Part shown: positions 35,678 to 40,630 of the stretch, piece after piece | Numbering within the stretch: position 1 is the stretch's first letter | Layout of the letters: the number at the start of each line of letters is the position of its first letter | Virus record (IMG/VR): IMGVR_UViG_3300033997_000478 | Location: 124,001-188,000 of that record | Reading direction: 5' to 3' (one strand) | DNA length: 64,000 nt | Notes under the pieces: model-generated | Seen by the model: the letters and a program-made list of their open reading frames with translations, nothing else | What the model was told of the DNA's origin: nothing | Database searches by the model: none | Position numbers and translations under genes: made by a program

Positions 35678-35780
35678 GTAACACGCTCCTGCCCCTTCGG
35701 GGGCAGGGGCAGATGGGGATCTCTTTCTTTTTCGGTATCGTATGGTAACCGCAACTATCACCTATGCCGGAGACGGGACC

Positions 35781-36446
35781 ATGTTCCCCATCGATTGGAC
35801 CAAACTGCTCAACCCCAAGAACATCGTCATGCTCGTGGTCTCCCTGCTGATGCTGGGGGCTGCGATCTACGGCGGTGTCAAGGTCTACAACTGGGTGTAC
35901 GATCGAGGCGCCGCCTCCCGTGATCCCGAAGTGGCCGAAGCCCAGCGCCTGCAGAAGGAGGCGGAGGACAACTACAAGCGCTACAAGGGCGAATACGACA
36001 ACTGGGTGGCCAACACCAAGAAAGCCAACGAGCAATACATCAAGGAACAACTGGCTGATCTGGATGCCCGTCAAAAGCGCCTGACGGAGGCTGAGACCGC
36101 TGCCCGCAACAAACCCGCAACCATCCAAGAGGTTATCAAGTATGTTCCCGCTGAAGTCGACGCTGCTTATCGTCTGCCTGTTGGCCTTGTCCGCCTGTAC
36201 AACGACACCCTCCAAGGACCCGCCGGCACCTATTCCGGCACTGGCCTTCCCGGAGGCTTCCAAGTCGATGCTGGAGAAGCGTCCGGCACTACGATGTCTC
36301 AATTTGGACAAGTCGCAGCTTTCAACAACACCGAGTGTGTCCTGCGTGGAAAGGTAGTCGAGGAATGGCAAGACTGGTATTCGGTCAATAAAGCCAAGTT
36401 CGACGCACTCCAAAAGCAACAGCAAGAAACCGCACCGAAACCGTAA
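35781..36446 (+). CDS. Inner-membrane spanin (Rz-like i-spanin)
   Basis: N-terminal TM, coiled coil, IQEVIKYVP...LPVGLVRLYN; contains an embedded lipoprotein gene. Confidence 0.78.
   Translation: MFPIDWTKLLNPKNIVMLVVSLLMLGAAIYGGVKVYNWVYDRGAASRDPEVAEAQRLQKEAEDNYKRYKGEYDNWVANTKKANEQYIKEQLADLDARQKRLTEAETAARNKPATIQEVIKYVPAEVDAAYRLPVGLVRLYNDTLQGPAGTYSGTGLPGGFQVDAGEASGTTMSQFGQVAAFNNTECVLRGKVVEEWQDWYSVNKAKFDALQKQQQETAPKP
36142..36357 (+). CDS. Outer-membrane lipoprotein spanin (Rz1-like o-spanin), embedded in the +1 frame
   Basis: AGAGG SD; MFPLKSTLLIVCLLALSA|C lipobox; Pro-rich mature part. Confidence 0.75.
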   Translation: MFPLKSTLLIVCLLALSACTTTPSKDPPAPIPALAFPEASKSMLEKRPALRCLNLDKSQLSTTPSVSCVER

Positions 36447-36459
36447 CTGGGGAATTACG

Positions 36460-37140
36460 ATGAACAAGCAGCAAGCCAAGGCTGACGTGCAGAGCATGCA
36501 CGATGAGCTCGGGGACTGGATCTACGGGTGTTCGCCGATCAAAGCGCGCAATCGCGCTGACGATTACAACAGCGATGCCGATGAGATCGAGAAAGCTCAA
36601 CCCAACAGCCCCATTGCCCAAGCACGGGCGATGCGCCTGAGGTCCAAGGCGACCTTGCTGAATCACCTCAGTGCCTGTCTGGAAGTGCTGGGCTGCGAAC
36701 TGGGGGCGCCTCCGATGGAGGAGCTTCCCAAGGGCGTGATCCGCTTCCCCGGCAAGCAGAACGAAACGATCATCTTCCACGAACCGGCTGACGGGGATGT
36801 GGAGGTAGACCAAGAATCCATGGTGTCTTTCACCGATGCTGAAATGAAGGCCGGTCCGCAGCCGCGCTTCAAGATCGGGGATGATGCTTGGATCGTGGAC
36901 CAGAACCCGGATGATCCTGAGGACATCGGCTTTCTGGAGGTAGTGATCGTCGGGGTCGATCACGGTGTGGAGGATGTACATTACCTCATCGGCCATCGCG
37001 GTGATGACGGAATCATCCGCACCAACTACGAATGCGTCTGCGCACACGAGATCCTGGGGGATCCGGATGAGTATGATGACACCCGTCCCAAGCGTCTGAG
37101 CAAGGAACAGGTGCGCGCTCACTTGCGCGTGGTCAAGTGA
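36460..37140 (+). CDS. Hypothetical protein ending in an SspB-type ClpX-binding tail (RAHLRVVK)
   Basis: C-terminal LRVVK-COOH; acidic SH3-like segment PRFKIGDDAWIV. Confidence 0.75.
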   Translation: MNKQQAKADVQSMHDELGDWIYGCSPIKARNRADDYNSDADEIEKAQPNSPIAQARAMRLRSKATLLNHLSACLEVLGCELGAPPMEELPKGVIRFPGKQNETIIFHEPADGDVEVDQESMVSFTDAEMKAGPQPRFKIGDDAWIVDQNPDDPEDIGFLEVVIVGVDHGVEDVHYLIGHRGDDGIIRTNYECVCAHEILGDPDEYDDTRPKRLSKEQVRAHLRVVK

Positions 37141-37147
37141 CATACAG

Positions 37148-37172
37148 GCCCCGCTTCGGCGGGGCTTTTATG
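37148..37172 (+). terminator. Intrinsic terminator
   Basis: gccccgc-TTCG-gcggggc followed by tttt. Confidence 0.8.
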
Positions 37173-37188
37173 TCGCCAATGAAAAATG

Positions 37189-37213
37189 GTTCACCGCTAT
37201 ACTACTCACGTGA
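37189..37213 (+). promoter_or_regulatory. Putative phage early promoter
   Basis: A-tract plus GTTCA-ccgcta-TACTAC-tcacg-TGA. Confidence 0.72.
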
Positions 37214-37235
37214 ACCTCAACCAAGGAAGTCTGCA

Positions 37236-37667
37236 ATGAAAGTCGATGTCGAATACATGCTGGATGAAGACGGCCATCAGCTCACCATCCATTTCCCCGG
37301 CCAGCAGCCATATTACCTGACCTACGACCTCGCCCCTGATGGCACCGTCTGTCAGGTGCATCTGAAAGAGATCAGCTGGGCCAAGCTGGGGATCACCGAC
37401 GACGTCCCCGGTCTGTTGCTCTCCCTGCACGTGCTGTCGCAGTTGCTGGAAGACGAATACGGCCCGACGATGTTTATCATCGACCCGGCCTACTTGAACG
37501 AACACCACTTCCCCAACTTCATCACCTCCCTCTCCAAGGTGGTGGAACAGGTGGGTTCTGACGTGGGGCCGCGTCTGATCGTCAAGGCCGAGGCTATCGC
37601 CAAGTGCTGGCACGATGTCTTCGGCGATGAGCCGGTGATCATCAATTCGGAGAAGGACCCGACATGA
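37236..37667 (+). CDS. Hypothetical protein
   Basis: AAGGA SD; ATG 37236 lies downstream of the promoter. Confidence 0.72.
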   Translation: MKVDVEYMLDEDGHQLTIHFPGQQPYYLTYDLAPDGTVCQVHLKEISWAKLGITDDVPGLLLSLHVLSQLLEDEYGPTMFIIDPAYLNEHHFPNFITSLSKVVEQVGSDVGPRLIVKAEAIAKCWHDVFGDEPVIINSEKDPT

Positions 37668-38073: not shown

Positions 38074-38184
38074 GGCACGTGGACTCCAGGGGAAAGGGTT
38101 GCGGTTAGTAGATCTTGCCTACACAGGATTACGTAAATTTTCACGCATGGATAACATCCTGTGGTAGAAGCCCGCTTAAGTCCT

Positions 38185-38398
38185 GACTTGCCGTCTTTTA
38201 CCCCTCGTCCCCCTAAGTGGCCTTTTAAGGCCGATCGCCCCTTCCTTGGCGAACCCTCTTACTTGGTGCGGGACGAGTCCTATTCAAATGACTTCTTAAA
38301 TCGTGGAAGATTGCAGCTCTTTTCAGAGCGCGATCATCGGTGCGTCTGGCAAATCCGGCACCGGCTGGCCCACTACCGTTCCAGGGGACGGGGAAGTC
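38185..38398 (+). ncRNA. Candidate structured ncRNA A (about 215 nt), unknown class
   Basis: Ends pair (GACTT.CCGTCTTTT with AGGGGACGG..AAGTC); internal helices such as CTCGTCCC/GGGACGAG; heads the tRNA cluster. Confidence 0.55.
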
Positions 38399-38409
38399 GC
38401 CTTTTCTGC

Positions 38410-38434
38410 GGACATGTAGCTCAGTTGGTTAGAG
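38410..38434 (+). pseudogene. 5' fragment of a tRNA gene (acceptor 5' strand plus D-arm)
   Basis: GGACATG-TA-GCTCAGTTGGTTAGAG; no matching 3' half seen nearby. Confidence 0.65.
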
Positions 38435-38439
38435 AGAAC

Positions 38440-38856
38440 ATGGGTAATAACTACAACCAGTACATGGCAGGCTACATGAATCGGCGCTATAAGAGACGTC
38501 GAGAGTGGGCTGTGGAATTACTGGGCGGGGTGTGTCGGCACTGCGGGAAGCCCGATGACGGGACTCATGAGTTTGACCACATTAACCCTACCGATAAGTT
38601 GGTGCCCATTGCAAGTCTTTGGTCGGCCAACCTCGAGCTCTTCCTGAACGAACTAGAGTGCTGTCAGCTTTTATGTAAAGCGTGCCACATCGTAAAGACT
38701 AGGAAAGATCTAGGTCAAAATGATGCGCGAATTGTCCACGGCACGCTTTCTAGCTATCGGTACTGTCGCTGCGATGCATGTAGACAAGCCAAAAGTGAAT
38801 GGTCGCGTCAGGCCTACATAAAGCGAAAAGAACAACAGCGACAACACTCACTTTGA
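38440..38856 (+). CDS. HNH (homing) endonuclease
   Basis: CRHCG...EFDHINP...CQLLCKACH, then HGT..Y..CRCDAC. Confidence 0.88.
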   Translation: MGNNYNQYMAGYMNRRYKRRREWAVELLGGVCRHCGKPDDGTHEFDHINPTDKLVPIASLWSANLELFLNELECCQLLCKACHIVKTRKDLGQNDARIVHGTLSSYRYCRCDACRQAKSEWSRQAYIKRKEQQRQHSL

Positions 38857-38866
38857 AAGTTTCACT

Positions 38867-38943
38867 AGGGATGTCGTCAAGTGGTCTAAGACACGGTCTT
38901 TTGATGTCCGCACGCGTAGGTTCGAATCCTGCCATCCCTGCCA
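38867..38943 (+). tRNA. tRNA-Gln (TTG)
   Basis: AGGGATG/CATCCCT acceptor, loop TT-TTG-AT, GGTTCGAATCC, encoded CCA; one anticodon-stem mismatch. Confidence 0.88.
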
Positions 38944-38952
38944 CAGTTTCAA

Positions 38953-39028
38953 GGGTCAGTAGCTCAATAAGGATAGAGCAGCGATCTCTGGTCGTTGGTT
39001 GAAGGTTCGAGTCCTTCTTGACCCGCCA
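38953..39028 (+). tRNA. tRNA-Arg-like gene with a 5-nt anticodon loop (atypical)
   Basis: Intact acceptor, D and T arms and CCA; GCGAT-CTCTG-GTCGT; body resembles tRNA-Arg(UCU). Confidence 0.7.
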
Positions 39029-39038
39029 CAGTTACAAA

Positions 39039-39110
39039 GCCCCCATGATGTACTGGAGCATTCCCGTCTCTAAAAGGACGGGTCGTGAGGTTCGAATCCT
39101 CAAAGGGGCA
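39039..39110 (+). tRNA. Atypical tRNA-like gene with CTA (amber) triplet in an enlarged anticodon loop
   Basis: CCCGT-CTCTAAAAGG-ACGGG; T arm TGAGG-TTCGAAT-CCTCA; 5-bp acceptor with two mismatches; no encoded CCA. Confidence 0.6.
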
Positions 39111-39123
39111 CTCACCTTTCAAT

Positions 39124-39199
39124 ACAGCGTTCGTCTAGCGGTCTAGGATCGCGGCCTTTCACGTCGCTAACACGGGTTCGAATCCCGTACGCTGTACCA
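39124..39199 (+). tRNA. tRNA-Glu (TTC)
   Basis: ACAGCGT/ACGCTGT acceptor, loop CT-TTC-AC, CCA. Confidence 0.93.
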
Positions 39200-39214
39200 C
39201 CTTTCGGAGCCTTC

Positions 39215-39409
39215 ATGAAGTATCCAACGATCTACAAGCTGGAGAATCTGGCAGCCCTTGCGGAGGGCAACGTCAGTAGCTCAGTCGACGGTAAGACCTG
39301 GGTTCCCACCCGTCCCATCGGCTACCCCAGTTGGCGTACGCGCCTGAAGGCTGCATGGCTGGTGCTCACCGGTCGTGCTGATGCGGTTGTCTGGCCGCAG
39401 GGTCAGTAA
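39215..39409 (+). CDS. Small phage hypothetical protein
   Basis: GGAG SD; WVPTRP...RLKAAWLVLTGRADAVVWP. Confidence 0.72.
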   Translation: MKYPTIYKLENLAALAEGNVSSSVDGKTWVPTRPIGYPSWRTRLKAAWLVLTGRADAVVWPQGQ

Positions 39410-39415
39410 GTTTTC

Positions 39416-39492
39416 TGTGGATTAGCTCAGTTGGCTAGAGCGTTCCCCTGATAAGGGAAAGGTCGGTGGTTCGAGTCCACTATCCGCAACCA
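39416..39492 (+). tRNA. tRNA-Ile (GAT)
   Basis: TGTGGAT/ATCCGCA acceptor, TTCCC-CTGATAA-GGGAA, CCA. Confidence 0.93.
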
Positions 39493-39889: not shown

Positions 39890-39914
39890 ATTGAGGGCTA
39901 TACTATCCCCATGA
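39890..39914 (+). promoter_or_regulatory. Putative phage early promoter (variant)
   Basis: ATTGA-gggcta-TACTAT-cccca-TGA, same spacing as the others. Confidence 0.55.
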
Positions 39915-39973
39915 CAGGGTGCATCAAAAAAGACACCCGAGTATCTTCCTATAGACCAAGAGGAAACCCGCCG

Positions 39974-40630
39974 ATGTTCCAGACTCCCAAGGGCATGTCC
40001 AGCTTCCTGCCCCATTATCTCTACGCTCTGGTTTACTGGATCGAGGAGAACAACTTCGACCCGTACCTGATCGTCAACCGCCAAGCGGAAGGTGTGGAGA
40101 TCCCCACGTCCGTTCCAGGCAATGACGACGGCACGATCGCACTGAACCTGGCCAGTCGTACGCGCGATGCGCAGCACTTCTACTTCACCGAGAACCACTT
40201 CGAGTACAAGACCGCCTTCAACGGCAAGCGTACAGTGGTGAAGGTGCCCTACACTGCGATCTACGCCGTGACAGCCCGTGGCTGTACCGAGTGGGAGGGT
40301 GAGAACGTCATCCACTTGTTGAACCTGCGTGATGGAAAGGTACAACAGATGTACGTAGTGATGGGCCCGCACGAAGAAGCCCCCACCTCATCCGAACTGC
40401 ATCGCATCGGCGAAGCGCTGATGGGCAGTCTCAAGTCGCCAGTGGCGGGCGAACAGCTGGCGGAAGAATTCACCAAGCGTCTGGCTGCAGCACCGCAGGA
40501 AACGCATCCGGACGTCGTCCAACCCACCCAATCCCATGAGTCCCACCCGGACGTCGTGGAAAACACCACCTCCACGGCCGAGCCGGCATCCAACGTCGTC
40601 TACGCCGCCTTCGGAAAAAGGAAGCCCTGA
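39974..40630 (+). CDS. sspB: Stringent starvation protein B homologue (ClpXP adaptor)
   Basis: PHYLYALVYWIEENNFDPYLIVN...GVEIP...DGTIALNLA...AFNG...VKVPYTAIYAVTAR aligns by eye with the E. coli SspB core. Confidence 0.85.
   Translation: MFQTPKGMSSFLPHYLYALVYWIEENNFDPYLIVNRQAEGVEIPTSVPGNDDGTIALNLASRTRDAQHFYFTENHFEYKTAFNGKRTVVKVPYTAIYAVTARGCTEWEGENVIHLLNLRDGKVQQMYVVMGPHEEAPTSSELHRIGEALMGSLKSPVAGEQLAEEFTKRLAAAPQETHPDVVQPTQSHESHPDVVENTTSTAEPASNVVYAAFGKRKP

What the first reader, a model, noticed from the sequence alone, without database searches (positions are those of the whole stretch)
36460..37140. Non-SspB phage protein ending in the ClpX-docking tail HLRVVK: candidate new ClpXP adaptor
Seen: the 226-aa protein has a helical N-terminal part, an acidic SH3-like segment, a charged linker, and ends KEQVRAHLRVVK-stop. 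Known: gammaproteobacterial SspB tethers to the ClpX zinc-binding N-domain through a C-terminal XB peptide ending LRVVK (E. coli RPALRVVK). The rest of this protein is not SspB-like. Inference: it either delivers chosen host proteins (for example defence factors) to ClpXP or competitively blocks adaptor binding. With the true sspB homologue about 3 kb downstream, this suggests a phage system for redirecting host proteolysis.
Basis: partly seen in the sequence, partly recalled or inferred. Interest (0 to 1): 0.75.

Follow-up and report, generated by a model that had tools for sequence, protein, structure and literature searches.

The report
Phage protein with SspB-type ClpX-docking tail
A small family of jumbo-phage proteins unrelated to SspB always ends in the short peptide that SspB uses to dock on the host ClpX unfoldase, so it is probably a phage-made adaptor, or blocker, of the host ClpXP protease, though no binding has been shown.

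Summary
Window 36460-37140 (+) encodes a 226-aa protein ending RAHLRVVK.

An AlphaFold2 model gives four parts:
- a confident helical N-domain (residues 1-80);
- a disordered acidic linker;
- a confident Tudor/SH3-like beta-barrel (125-200);
- a disordered tail.

It has no Pfam, PHROG or NCBIfam hit and no profile similarity to SspB.

I found 20 homologues, from Xanthomonas jumbo phages and metagenomes, only 21-57% identical. All 21 proteins, the window's included, keep a terminal or near-terminal [L/M]-x-[V/I/L]-[V/I]-[K/R/Q] motif. L222 and V225 are among the eight best-conserved columns, although the linker before them cannot be aligned.

In a survey of real SspB proteins, 80 of 80 Enterobacterales and 39 of 40 class-wide genomes ended in the same motif, including RSHLKVVK and RPHLRVVK. 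A profile built from those tails puts every family tail in about the top 1% of the phage's own ORF ends.

The phage encodes no ClpX zinc-binding domain, ClpP or Clp-type AAA_2 ATPase domain, so the target would be host ClpX.

An SspB-like gene lies 1.3-3.2 kb downstream in 6 of 10 contexts, mostly with a non-canonical tail.

Binding, cargo and the choice between adaptor and inhibitor remain inferred; the one complex prediction gave no verdict. I rate it a new variant of a known kind, interest about 0.65.

The parts
36460..37140 (+). Gene for the 226-aa tail-bearing protein (stop codon included)
   Evidence: ORF listing and sequence. Homologues are found only in jumbo phages and metagenomes. 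No Pfam, PHROG or NCBIfam hit.
36460..36699 (+). Residues 1-80: helical N-terminal domain (helices 3-17, 20-23, 26-46, 51-77). Function unknown, possibly dimerisation. Missing in the short family members.
   Evidence: AF2 pLDDT 93-98. Only generic helical-hairpin or bundle matches, Z at most 7.2. Absent in P0001, P0003, P0020, P0023, P0025 and P0029.
36700..36831 (+). Residues 81-124: acidic, poorly conserved, disordered inter-domain linker
   Evidence: pLDDT 48-75. 9 acidic against 3 basic residues, pI 4.25. Cannot be aligned across the family.
36832..37059 (+). Residues 125-200: Tudor/chromo-barrel-like (SH3-type) beta-barrel, the only folded module present in every family member. Presumed binding module.
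   Evidence: pLDDT 87-95 with strands 142-194. Invariant G140, Y175 and G178; nearly invariant P135, D141 and G165. Weak fold matches to MSL3/MRG15 chromo-barrels, Tudor, KOW and NifZ.
37060..37107 (+). Residues 201-216: short flexible tether between the barrel and the tail motif
   Evidence: pLDDT falls from 82 to 55. The spacing from the barrel's YxIG to the motif's Leu is held at 40-48 residues in 20 of 21 members.
37108..37137 (+). Residues 217-226, QVRAHLRVVK: SspB-type XB-like ClpX-docking peptide
   Evidence: L222 and V225 are at least 90% conserved. Motif present in 21 of 21 members. E. coli SspB ends RGGRPALRVVK. 119 of 120 surveyed SspB proteins end in the same motif. PSSM score 8.2 against a background mean of -15.6, sd 5.7.
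37148..37169 (+). Intrinsic-terminator-like hairpin (GCCCCGC-TTCG-GCGGGGC) with T-run directly after the stop codon
   Evidence: Sequence and scan. The LucasX homologue is annotated with Rho-independent terminators on both sides.
39911..40630 (+). Linked SspB-like gene: gamma-type substrate-binding domain with a non-canonical C-terminal tail ...VVYAAFGKRKP. A possible functional partner; the association is not proven.
   Evidence: PF04386 3.5e-9, phrog_8945; NCBIfam 4e-14. The same arrangement occurs in LucasX, RTH11, L130, L132 and L133.

Best explanation
The gene encodes a phage-made protein that tethers itself to the N-terminal zinc-binding domain of the host ClpX through a C-terminal peptide of the SspB 'XB' type (consensus basic-x-[P/H]-x-L-x-[V/I/L]-V-[K/R]).

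Its minimal conserved unit is a Tudor/SH3-like barrel, a flexible tether of about 15-20 residues, and the XB tail. That is the same logic as SspB (binding domain, flexible linker, XB), built on an unrelated fold.

The most likely function is a phage-encoded ClpXP adaptor. The barrel, helped in long forms by the helical N-domain that may dimerise it, would bind a so far unknown host or phage protein. Tethering would raise that protein's local concentration at ClpXP so that it is unfolded and degraded.

What is shown: the ORF, the domain layout (as a prediction), the strict conservation of the tail, its identity with natural SspB tails, the lack of homology to SspB, and that the ClpX zinc-binding domain, ClpP and Clp-type AAA_2 domain were not found in the phage.

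What is inferred: binding to ClpX, the adaptor role, and any cargo.
For: 1. Tail conservation under divergence. 21 of 21 family members, 21-57% identical to the window protein, end in the motif. At the five motif positions the counts are: position 1, L 20 and M 1; position 2, variable; position 3, V 11, I 6, L 4; position 4, V 20, I 1; position 5, K 13, R 7, Q 1. The preceding linker cannot be aligned.

2. The motif equals the natural XB tail. E. coli SspB ends RPALRVVK. 80 of 80 Enterobacterales SspB end RP[AS]LRVVK, and 39 of 40 SspB from a class-wide even sample end in the motif, with variants such as RSHLKVVK, RPHLRVVK, RSHLTVVK and ASHLTLVK that also occur in this family. With a PSSM built from those tails, all family tails score at least -0.3, against a background of 846 phage ORF ends with mean -15.6 and sd 5.7. 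10 of 19 scored members beat every background ORF.

3. Architecture. Confident folded modules are joined to a disordered tail, with a constrained barrel-to-motif spacing of 40-48 residues.

4. One member, P0021, carries two motif copies in tandem. That fits selection for avidity toward a multivalent receptor.

5. Members with 1-6 residues after the motif fit published data that XB is bound by the ClpX zinc-binding domain regardless of its position in the polypeptide (PMC12373786).

6. Published data show that bait + linker + XB is enough to drive ClpXP degradation of an untagged target, with a Kd of about 35-80 nM for ClpX or its zinc-binding domain (PMC12373786). SspB lacking its ClpX-binding sequence loses its effect (PMC7804408).

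7. No ClpX zinc-binding domain (PF06689), ClpP (PF00574) or AAA_2 (PF07724) match in the complete phage genome, so the receptor must be the host's.

8. The barrel is kept in every member, including the 132-155 aa forms that are only barrel + tail. This argues that the barrel binds something and is not a passive carrier.
Against: - There is no direct evidence of binding.
- The host is not known; only relatives are Xanthomonas phages. I could not retrieve a named Xanthomonas SspB or ClpX sequence to compare.
- No cargo is identified. The barrel's fold matches are weak and generic.
- The tether of about 15-20 residues is shorter than the roughly 40-50-residue SspB linker (E. coli sequence). That may suit blocking better than delivery.
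- The window protein and its closest relative lack the Pro usual at position -7 or -6 (RAHLRVVK, RASMRVVK), and P0009 has Met in place of the key Leu.
- Several family members are close relatives of one another, so the count of independent observations is nearer 15 than 21.
Confidence: 0.55

Rival explanations
1. It is a competitive blocker (anti-adaptor). The protein docks on the ClpX zinc-binding domains only to occupy them. This shuts off host adaptors (SspB, RssB) and degradation that depends on the N-domain, for example to protect phage proteins or to disturb host stress responses. It would carry no cargo of its own.
For: The tail evidence is the same as for the main explanation. The zinc-binding domain is a shared docking site for SspB, RssB, trigger factor and substrates such as lambda O, so occupancy is expected to compete (PMC7804408). 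The short tether and the duplicated motif in P0021 would favour tight occupancy.
Against: A blocker would not need a conserved folded barrel with invariant surface-type residues in every member. Published XB peptides activate rather than inhibit the ClpX ATPase (PMC12373786).
Confidence: 0.2
2. The tail is a self-destruct handle. It tethers the phage protein itself to ClpXP so that it is turned over quickly, giving temporal control of an early protein. The real activity of the barrel and N-domain would have nothing to do with proteolysis.
For: Fusing XB to eGFP caused moderate, steady degradation of the fusion that depended on clpX and clpP (PMC12373786). The gene sits in a block of small hypothetical genes with its own terminator.
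Against: SspB itself carries this tail without being a notable substrate (my own knowledge of the field). Phage proteins usually achieve instability with simple terminal degrons rather than a tethering motif. The strict conservation of tether length is more typical of a geometric delivery constraint.
Confidence: 0.12
3. The C-terminal motif binds something other than ClpX, such as a phage partner or another host protein, and the likeness to the SspB tail is convergent or coincidental.
For: The motif is short: five defining positions plus a basic/Pro context. No binding data exist and the host is unidentified.
Against: The match extends to the upstream basic-x-[P/H]-x context and to the same set of variants seen in natural SspB tails. 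The tail's disorder and terminal position mirror SspB. In one related phage the neighbouring true SspB homologue carries the canonical tail ...GHLRIIK (L133), so this phage group does use the motif in its known role.
Confidence: 0.13

Closest known systems
SspB (stringent starvation protein B, ClpXP specificity-enhancing factor; Pfam PF04386)
   Same: The C-terminal peptide is of the same type: E. coli RPALRVVK, and 119 of 120 surveyed SspB proteins. It sits at the end of a disordered segment that follows a small folded binding domain. The overall logic is binding domain, flexible linker, XB.
   Different: No sequence or profile similarity outside the tail (no PF04386 hit; hhalign probability 0.1%). 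The folded module is a Tudor/SH3-like barrel, not the SspB fold. There is an extra helical N-domain. The tether is shorter. It was found only in phage genomes and metagenomic contigs; a scan of bacterial genomes with the window protein alone found no close relative.
Phage-encoded SspB homologues (for example Pseudomonas phage pf16 gp18, Erwinia phage RAY gp039, phrog_8945)
   Same: They are phage genes presumed to interface with host ClpXP (PMC5587285; bioRxiv 10.1101/2023.02.24.529968). One such gene lies 2.8 kb downstream in this window.
   Different: Those are true SspB homologues. This family is not. Here the canonical tail sits on the non-SspB protein, while the adjacent SspB-like protein mostly carries a different tail.
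CLIPPER / GroTAC synthetic degraders (XB anchor + linker + bait peptide)
   Same: An XB peptide fused through a linker to an unrelated binding element recruits ClpXP to an untagged target (PMC12373786). That is exactly the mechanism proposed here.
   Different: Those are engineered peptides. This would be a natural, phage-evolved protein whose bait is a folded domain and whose target is unknown.
Other adaptors and partners that dock on the ClpX N-domain (RssB, trigger factor, UmuD; CpdR in Caulobacter)
   Same: They use the ClpX zinc-binding domain as a docking hub (PMC7804408).
   Different: They are not reported to use an SspB-identical C-terminal peptide. UmuD's motif is internal and N-terminal (my own knowledge). 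They are host proteins, not phage proteins.
Phage modulators of other host AAA+ proteases (jumbo-phage ClpS homologues; SPO1 Gp53 for ClpCP; T4 PinA and T7 Gp4.5 for Lon)
   Same: The concept is the same: a phage redirects or inhibits host ATP-dependent proteolysis. ClpS in jumbo phages is described in PMC7824862. The other examples are from my own knowledge.
   Different: They act on different proteases by different mechanisms. None is an XB-tail mimic for ClpX.

Membership tests
SspB family (PF04386) | SspB substrate-binding domain recognisable by sequence or profile | tested here: not met
   No Pfam, PHROG or NCBIfam hit at E<=0.1. hhalign of family alignment A2 against SspB alignment A3 gave probability 0.1%.
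SspB family (PF04386) | SspB-type fold of the binding domain | tested here: not met
   No SspB structure appears among the Foldseek PDB or VIA-align matches listed (the best 50 of each). The matches are Tudor, chromo-barrel and KOW barrels.
SspB family (PF04386) | C-terminal XB peptide (L-x-V-V-K type) after a disordered linker | tested here: met
   RAHLRVVK at the C-terminus with pLDDT below 50. It matches the profile of 41 natural SspB tails.
XB-tethered ClpXP adaptor (functional class) | Tethering motif conserved across homologues | tested here: met
   21 of 21 members. L222 and V225 are at least 90% conserved.
XB-tethered ClpXP adaptor (functional class) | Physical binding of the tail to the ClpX N-terminal zinc-binding domain | not testable with these tools
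   This needs biochemistry (BLI, ITC or pull-down with tail mutants). The single in-silico attempt gave no verdict and is not evidence either way.
XB-tethered ClpXP adaptor (functional class) | A separate domain that binds a defined cargo | tested here: inconclusive
   A conserved, confidently folded barrel exists in all members, but no cargo or binding site could be identified.
XB-tethered ClpXP adaptor (functional class) | Multivalency (dimerisation, as in SspB) for bivalent tethering | not tested
   The helical N-domain might dimerise. One member has two tandem motifs. No oligomer prediction was available.
Tudor / chromo-barrel (SH3-type barrel) superfamily | Five-stranded barrel that superposes on known members with significant scores | tested here: inconclusive
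   Foldseek PDB best E=0.017-0.02 (MSL3, MRG15; TM by target about 0.5). AFDB clusters reach 1e-4 to Tudor/SGF29 entries. VIA Z=6.7 to MRG15, below the tool's own Z<8 caution level.

The most novel reading that the evidence does not exclude
Mobile elements have repeatedly captured the SspB XB peptide as a portable 'send to ClpX' handle. On this reading the jumbo-phage family is a natural PROTAC-like degrader. It uses a Tudor-like barrel to seize a specific host protein, for example a defence or stress factor, and feeds it to host ClpXP. It may act together with the neighbouring SspB-like protein, whose own tail has diverged. Unrelated phage and prophage proteins that end in RPxLRVVK (an integrase, an HTH-ImmA/IrrE protein and several small proteins) would be further instances of the same strategy.
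Probability: 0.25. Interest if true: 0.85.

Novelty: new variant of a known kind. Interest (0 to 1): 0.65.

Why it matters
ClpXP adaptors are few, and almost all known ones are host-encoded. SspB is the textbook case, and its XB tail is the best-understood tethering signal.

A phage protein family that carries the same signal on an unrelated binding domain would be the first natural example of a virus re-aiming, or jamming, ClpXP by tail mimicry. It would also be a natural counterpart of the engineered XB-based degraders published in 2025.

The claim can be tested directly: peptide binding to the ClpX N-domain, tail-deletion controls, and ClpP-trap proteomics. Identifying the barrel's partner could reveal which host protein a jumbo phage needs removed or protected.

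The side observation that other mobile-element proteins end in the same peptide suggests the principle may be more general.

Tried and rejected
- **Complex prediction.** I ran CLPX_XANCP residues 1-60 in two copies, plus Zn, plus tail residues 197-226. The score was 0.29, below the 0.34 mark, and the controls were not run. The result is no verdict, so it counts neither for nor against binding.
- **Family libraries.** Pfam, PHROGs and NCBIfam gave no hit for the protein.
- **ESM Atlas feature search.** Only unnamed clusters at a score of 0.75, which is not informative.
- **Fold searches** (PDB Foldseek, AFDB clusters, BFVD, VIA-align wide, Atlas). These returned only generic helical and Tudor/SH3-like matches. 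The BFVD top hits are the family's own members.
- **The search for related loci.** It failed with alignment A1, which has no stretch conserved enough. With the single protein it found nothing in viral contigs or genome contigs.
- **Named Xanthomonas SspB tail.** W handles have no relatives. The class-level search reached through an E. coli handle returns genomes without taxonomy. The survey of natural tails is therefore class-wide but unnamed, and the host's own SspB tail was not seen directly. Unpublished genome G038 was in the tally, but no sequence from it was used.
- **Other XB-tailed proteins in this phage.** I considered that the phage might carry more of them, and rejected this: the target is the only credible one.
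- **Phage-encoded receptor.** I considered that the tail might dock on a phage ClpX, and rejected this: no zinc-binding domain, ClpP or AAA_2 match was found in the complete genome.
- **Opposite strand.** I rejected the minus-strand ORF 36385..37143, because the plus-strand product has conserved homologues and folds with high confidence.
- **Phage SspB-like relatives.** tblastn of the phage SspB-like protein against GenBank phages found only LucasX.

Full report
**1. The observation**

Window 36460..37140 (+) is an open frame of 226 codons ending ...KEQVRAHLRVVK, followed by TGA. A GGGGA ribosome-binding-like element precedes the ATG. A 7-bp GC hairpin with a T-run (37148-37169) follows the stop.

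The window is bases 124001-188000 of a complete 324,428-bp virus record with direct terminal repeats and 58% G+C. Its only GenBank relatives at this locus are the Xanthomonas jumbo phages LucasX, RTH11 and Xoo-sp14.

The protein has no hit in Pfam, PHROGs or NCBIfam.

**2. Anatomy**

An AlphaFold2 model built on a 17-sequence family alignment has mean pLDDT 84. It shows:
- a confident helical N-domain, residues 1-80;
- a low-confidence acidic linker, about 85-120;
- a confident beta-barrel, about 125-200;
- a low-confidence C-terminal segment whose last six residues fall below pLDDT 50.

The barrel resembles Tudor, chromo-barrel, KOW and NifZ (SH3-type) barrels, but only weakly. Foldseek against PDB gives E of 0.017 or worse, AFDB clusters reach about 1e-4, and VIA gives Z 6.7, under the tool's own caution level. 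The N-domain gives only generic helical matches. No SspB structure appears among the listed matches. A profile-profile comparison of the family with an SspB alignment gives probability 0.1%. 'Not SspB' is therefore tested and holds.

**3. Is the tail conserved?**

An exhaustive HMMER search of 1.84 billion representatives found 20 proteins at E<=0.001. Three of those are long repetitive proteins that I set aside. A profile search of the 5.8-billion collection added two more, and tblastn found the three GenBank phage copies.

Together with the window protein these make a family of 21 (20 homologues). Identity to the window protein is 21-57%. Six members are short forms of 132-155 aa that lack the N-domain.

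Every member ends, with 0-6 residues after it, in a five-position motif:
- position 1: L in 20, M in 1;
- position 2: variable;
- position 3: V in 11, I in 6, L in 4;
- position 4: V in 20, I in 1;
- position 5: K in 13, R in 7, Q in 1.

The motif is usually preceded by basic-x-[P/H]-x. In the alignment, L222 and V225 are among only eight columns that are at least 90% conserved. The other six lie in the barrel, and the segment between barrel and motif cannot be aligned.

The distance from the barrel's YxIG to the motif's Leu is held at 40-48 residues in 20 of 21 members. The exception, P0021, carries two motif copies in tandem.

Some members are close relatives of each other, so the number of independent observations is nearer 15.

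**4. Is it the SspB tail?**

E. coli K-12 SspB, taken from the annotated genome, ends RGGRPALRVVK.

To avoid relying on memory, I surveyed natural SspB C-termini in two sets:
- 80 Enterobacterales genomes: all end RP[AS]LRVVK.
- 40 SspB genes taken from the best-scoring matches of an even sample of 301 genomes of the E. coli class (281 of which had SspB): 39 end in the motif.

The variants seen include RSHLKVVK, RPHLRVVK, RSHLTVVK, ASHLTLVK and KPTLTIVK. These are the same variants seen in the phage family.

A position-specific matrix built from 41 natural tails scores the family tails from -0.3 to 23.8; the window tail scores 8.2. The last 20 residues of 846 ORFs of this phage score a mean of -15.6 with sd 5.7. 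10 of 19 scored members beat every background ORF.

A regular-expression scan of all 1,916 ORFs of the phage finds no other credible protein with the tail.

**5. What would it dock on?**

The phage genome has no match to the ClpX zinc-binding domain, ClpP or the Clp-type AAA_2 ATPase domain. The only available receptor is therefore the host's ClpX.

The relevant published facts are these:
- SspB binds the ClpX N-domain through its C-terminal segment, and is stabilised mainly by that tether (10.1101/2022.11.06.515074).
- SspB lacking the ClpX-binding sequence loses its effect, and the zinc-binding domain is a shared docking hub for SspB, RssB and trigger factor (PMC7804408).
- An XB peptide binds ClpX or its zinc-binding domain with Kd of about 35-80 nM, regardless of its position in a polypeptide, and activates the ATPase.
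- XB + linker + bait is enough to make ClpXP degrade an untagged target. XB fused to eGFP causes slow clpX/clpP-dependent loss of the fusion itself (PMC12373786).

**6. Mechanism**

The best-supported reading is a ClpX-tethered protein built on SspB's logic with an unrelated binding module. I rate it most likely an adaptor.

I favour adaptor over pure blocker because the barrel, with its invariant G140, Y175 and G178 and nearly invariant P135, D141 and G165, is retained in every member, including those that are only barrel plus tail.

Three rivals remain open:
- a blocker, favoured by the short tether and the duplicated motif;
- a self-destruct handle, supported by the eGFP-XB result;
- a tail with a non-ClpX partner.

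None can be excluded without biochemistry.

**7. The 'system' with sspB**

The downstream SspB-like gene is real: window 39911..40630, with PF04386, phrog_8945 and NCBIfam hits. Its closest solved relatives are E. coli and H. influenzae SspB.

An SspB-like gene lies 1.3-3.2 kb downstream of the tail protein in six contexts: the window, LucasX, RTH11, L130, L132 and L133.

It was not found in four:
- the 2.3-5 kb of downstream flank available in L129, L134 and L135;
- the whole Xoo-sp14 genome.

These phages are syntenic relatives, so linkage alone is weak evidence for a joint function.

Five of the six linked SspB-like proteins end not in the canonical tail but in a motif of their own, V-R-x-V-[D/T]-F-x3-R-[P/K]-[P/K]-K. 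Only the L133 copy ends ...GHLRIIK. Whether the variant tail still binds ClpX, or binds the barrel of the neighbouring protein, is unknown.

**8. A wider pattern (partly followed)**

I scanned IMG/VR for DNA encoding R-P-x-L-R-V-V-K-stop, with CGN arginine codons only. It returned 33 loci.

About 20 are recurrent short spurious ORFs. Ten ORFs of 59-457 aa (L139, L140, L145, L147, L149, L153, L155, L160, L164, L166; L159 repeats L149) belong neither to SspB nor to this family, and most carry the tail after a Pro/Lys/Gly-rich stretch. They include a tyrosine integrase (PF00589) and an HTH + IrrE/ImmA peptidase protein (PF06114).

My rough expectation for random C-termini is well below one. This suggests, but does not prove, that the XB peptide is a portable module among mobile elements.

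**9. Verdict**

The inference that this is a ClpX-docking tail on a non-SspB scaffold is strongly supported by comparative sequence evidence. The function (adaptor, blocker or self-turnover) and any cargo are inferred.

I found no description of such a family in the literature searches. Phage SspB homologues and phage ClpS are known, but a non-SspB XB-tailed phage protein is not.

I rate it a new variant of a known kind, interest about 0.65.

Noticed in passing
window 39911-40630 (+); L127:1435-1974, L128:1366-2016, L130:9584-10093, L132:5168-5695, L133:8025-8546: The phage SspB-like proteins next to the tail family mostly end in their own conserved motif: ...VRTVDFRAPRKPKS, ...VRVVDFSKNRPKK, ...VRHVTFGQPRPPKN, ...MADFRARRKPSS, and in the window ...NVVYAAFGKRKP. 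That replaces the canonical L-x-V-V-K. Only the L133 copy ends ...GHLRIIK. Whether this is a diverged ClpX-binding tail or a handle for another partner is unknown.
   Followed up: partly
L145:3193-4191 (-), L147:1945-3315 (+), L149:7432-7836 (-), L166:3861-4562 (+), L155:1235-1411 (-), L140:4478-4741 (+): Unrelated proteins on IMG/VR viral contigs end in RPxLRVVK after a Pro/Lys/Gly-rich stretch. They include an HTH + IrrE/ImmA peptidase, a tyrosine integrase and several small proteins without a family. Far more were found than my rough chance estimate, which suggests the XB tail is grafted onto other mobile-element proteins too.
   Followed up: partly
L137, L138, L141-L144, L146, L150-L152, L154, L156-L158, L161-L163, L167, L168 (positions): The same DNA scan hit about 20 viral contigs at a recurrent short ORF of 26-43 aa ending ...VWRPYLRVVK or ...VWRPCLRVVK. 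It is probably an out-of-frame reading of some conserved element and not a real XB-tailed protein.
   Followed up: no
window 39039-39111 (+), within the tRNA cluster 38867-39492: The cluster has five tRNA genes (Gln-TTG, Arg-TCT, Glu-TTC, Ile-GAT). ARAGORN reports the fifth, at 39039-39111, with an odd four-base anticodon 'taaa' and no amino-acid assignment.
   Followed up: no
window 38161-38856 (+): An HNH endonuclease gene (phrog_4234, E=1e-24) sits directly upstream of the tRNA cluster, between the tail protein and the SspB-like gene. The closest relative's contig (L129) has no gene of comparable size called at the corresponding position (not checked by search), so it may be a mobile insertion.
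   Followed up: no
window 35742-36446 (+): The gene immediately upstream encodes a 234-aa protein with an N-terminal hydrophobic segment and a coiled-coil-like stretch (phrog_4952 'signal peptide motif', weak Rz-like spanin hit). RTH11 has a clear homologue at the same position. LucasX and metagenomic contigs L129, L133, L134 and L135 have a gene of similar size (221-229 aa) there (not aligned).
   Followed up: partly
P0021 (metagenomic homologue, L135:759-1481): This family member carries two copies of the tail motif about 25 residues apart (...QASLRLVSS...RSHLTVIR), so it is a bivalent tail within one chain.
   Followed up: no
window 37137-37667 (+): The listed ORF starts at a GTG overlapping the stop of the tail gene and runs through the terminator hairpin. 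The real start is more likely the ATG at 37236, preceded by AGGAAG, which gives a 143-aa protein of unknown function. Genes of 143 and 154 aa sit at the same position in L129 and LucasX; they were not aligned.
   Followed up: no
L001 (Xanthomonas phage Xoo-sp14, MT939492.1): Xoo-sp14 carries only a short (133 aa) barrel-plus-tail version ending RGKRPALFIVK, and its whole genome has no detectable SspB-like gene. The tail protein therefore occurs without the SspB-like partner.
   Followed up: yes
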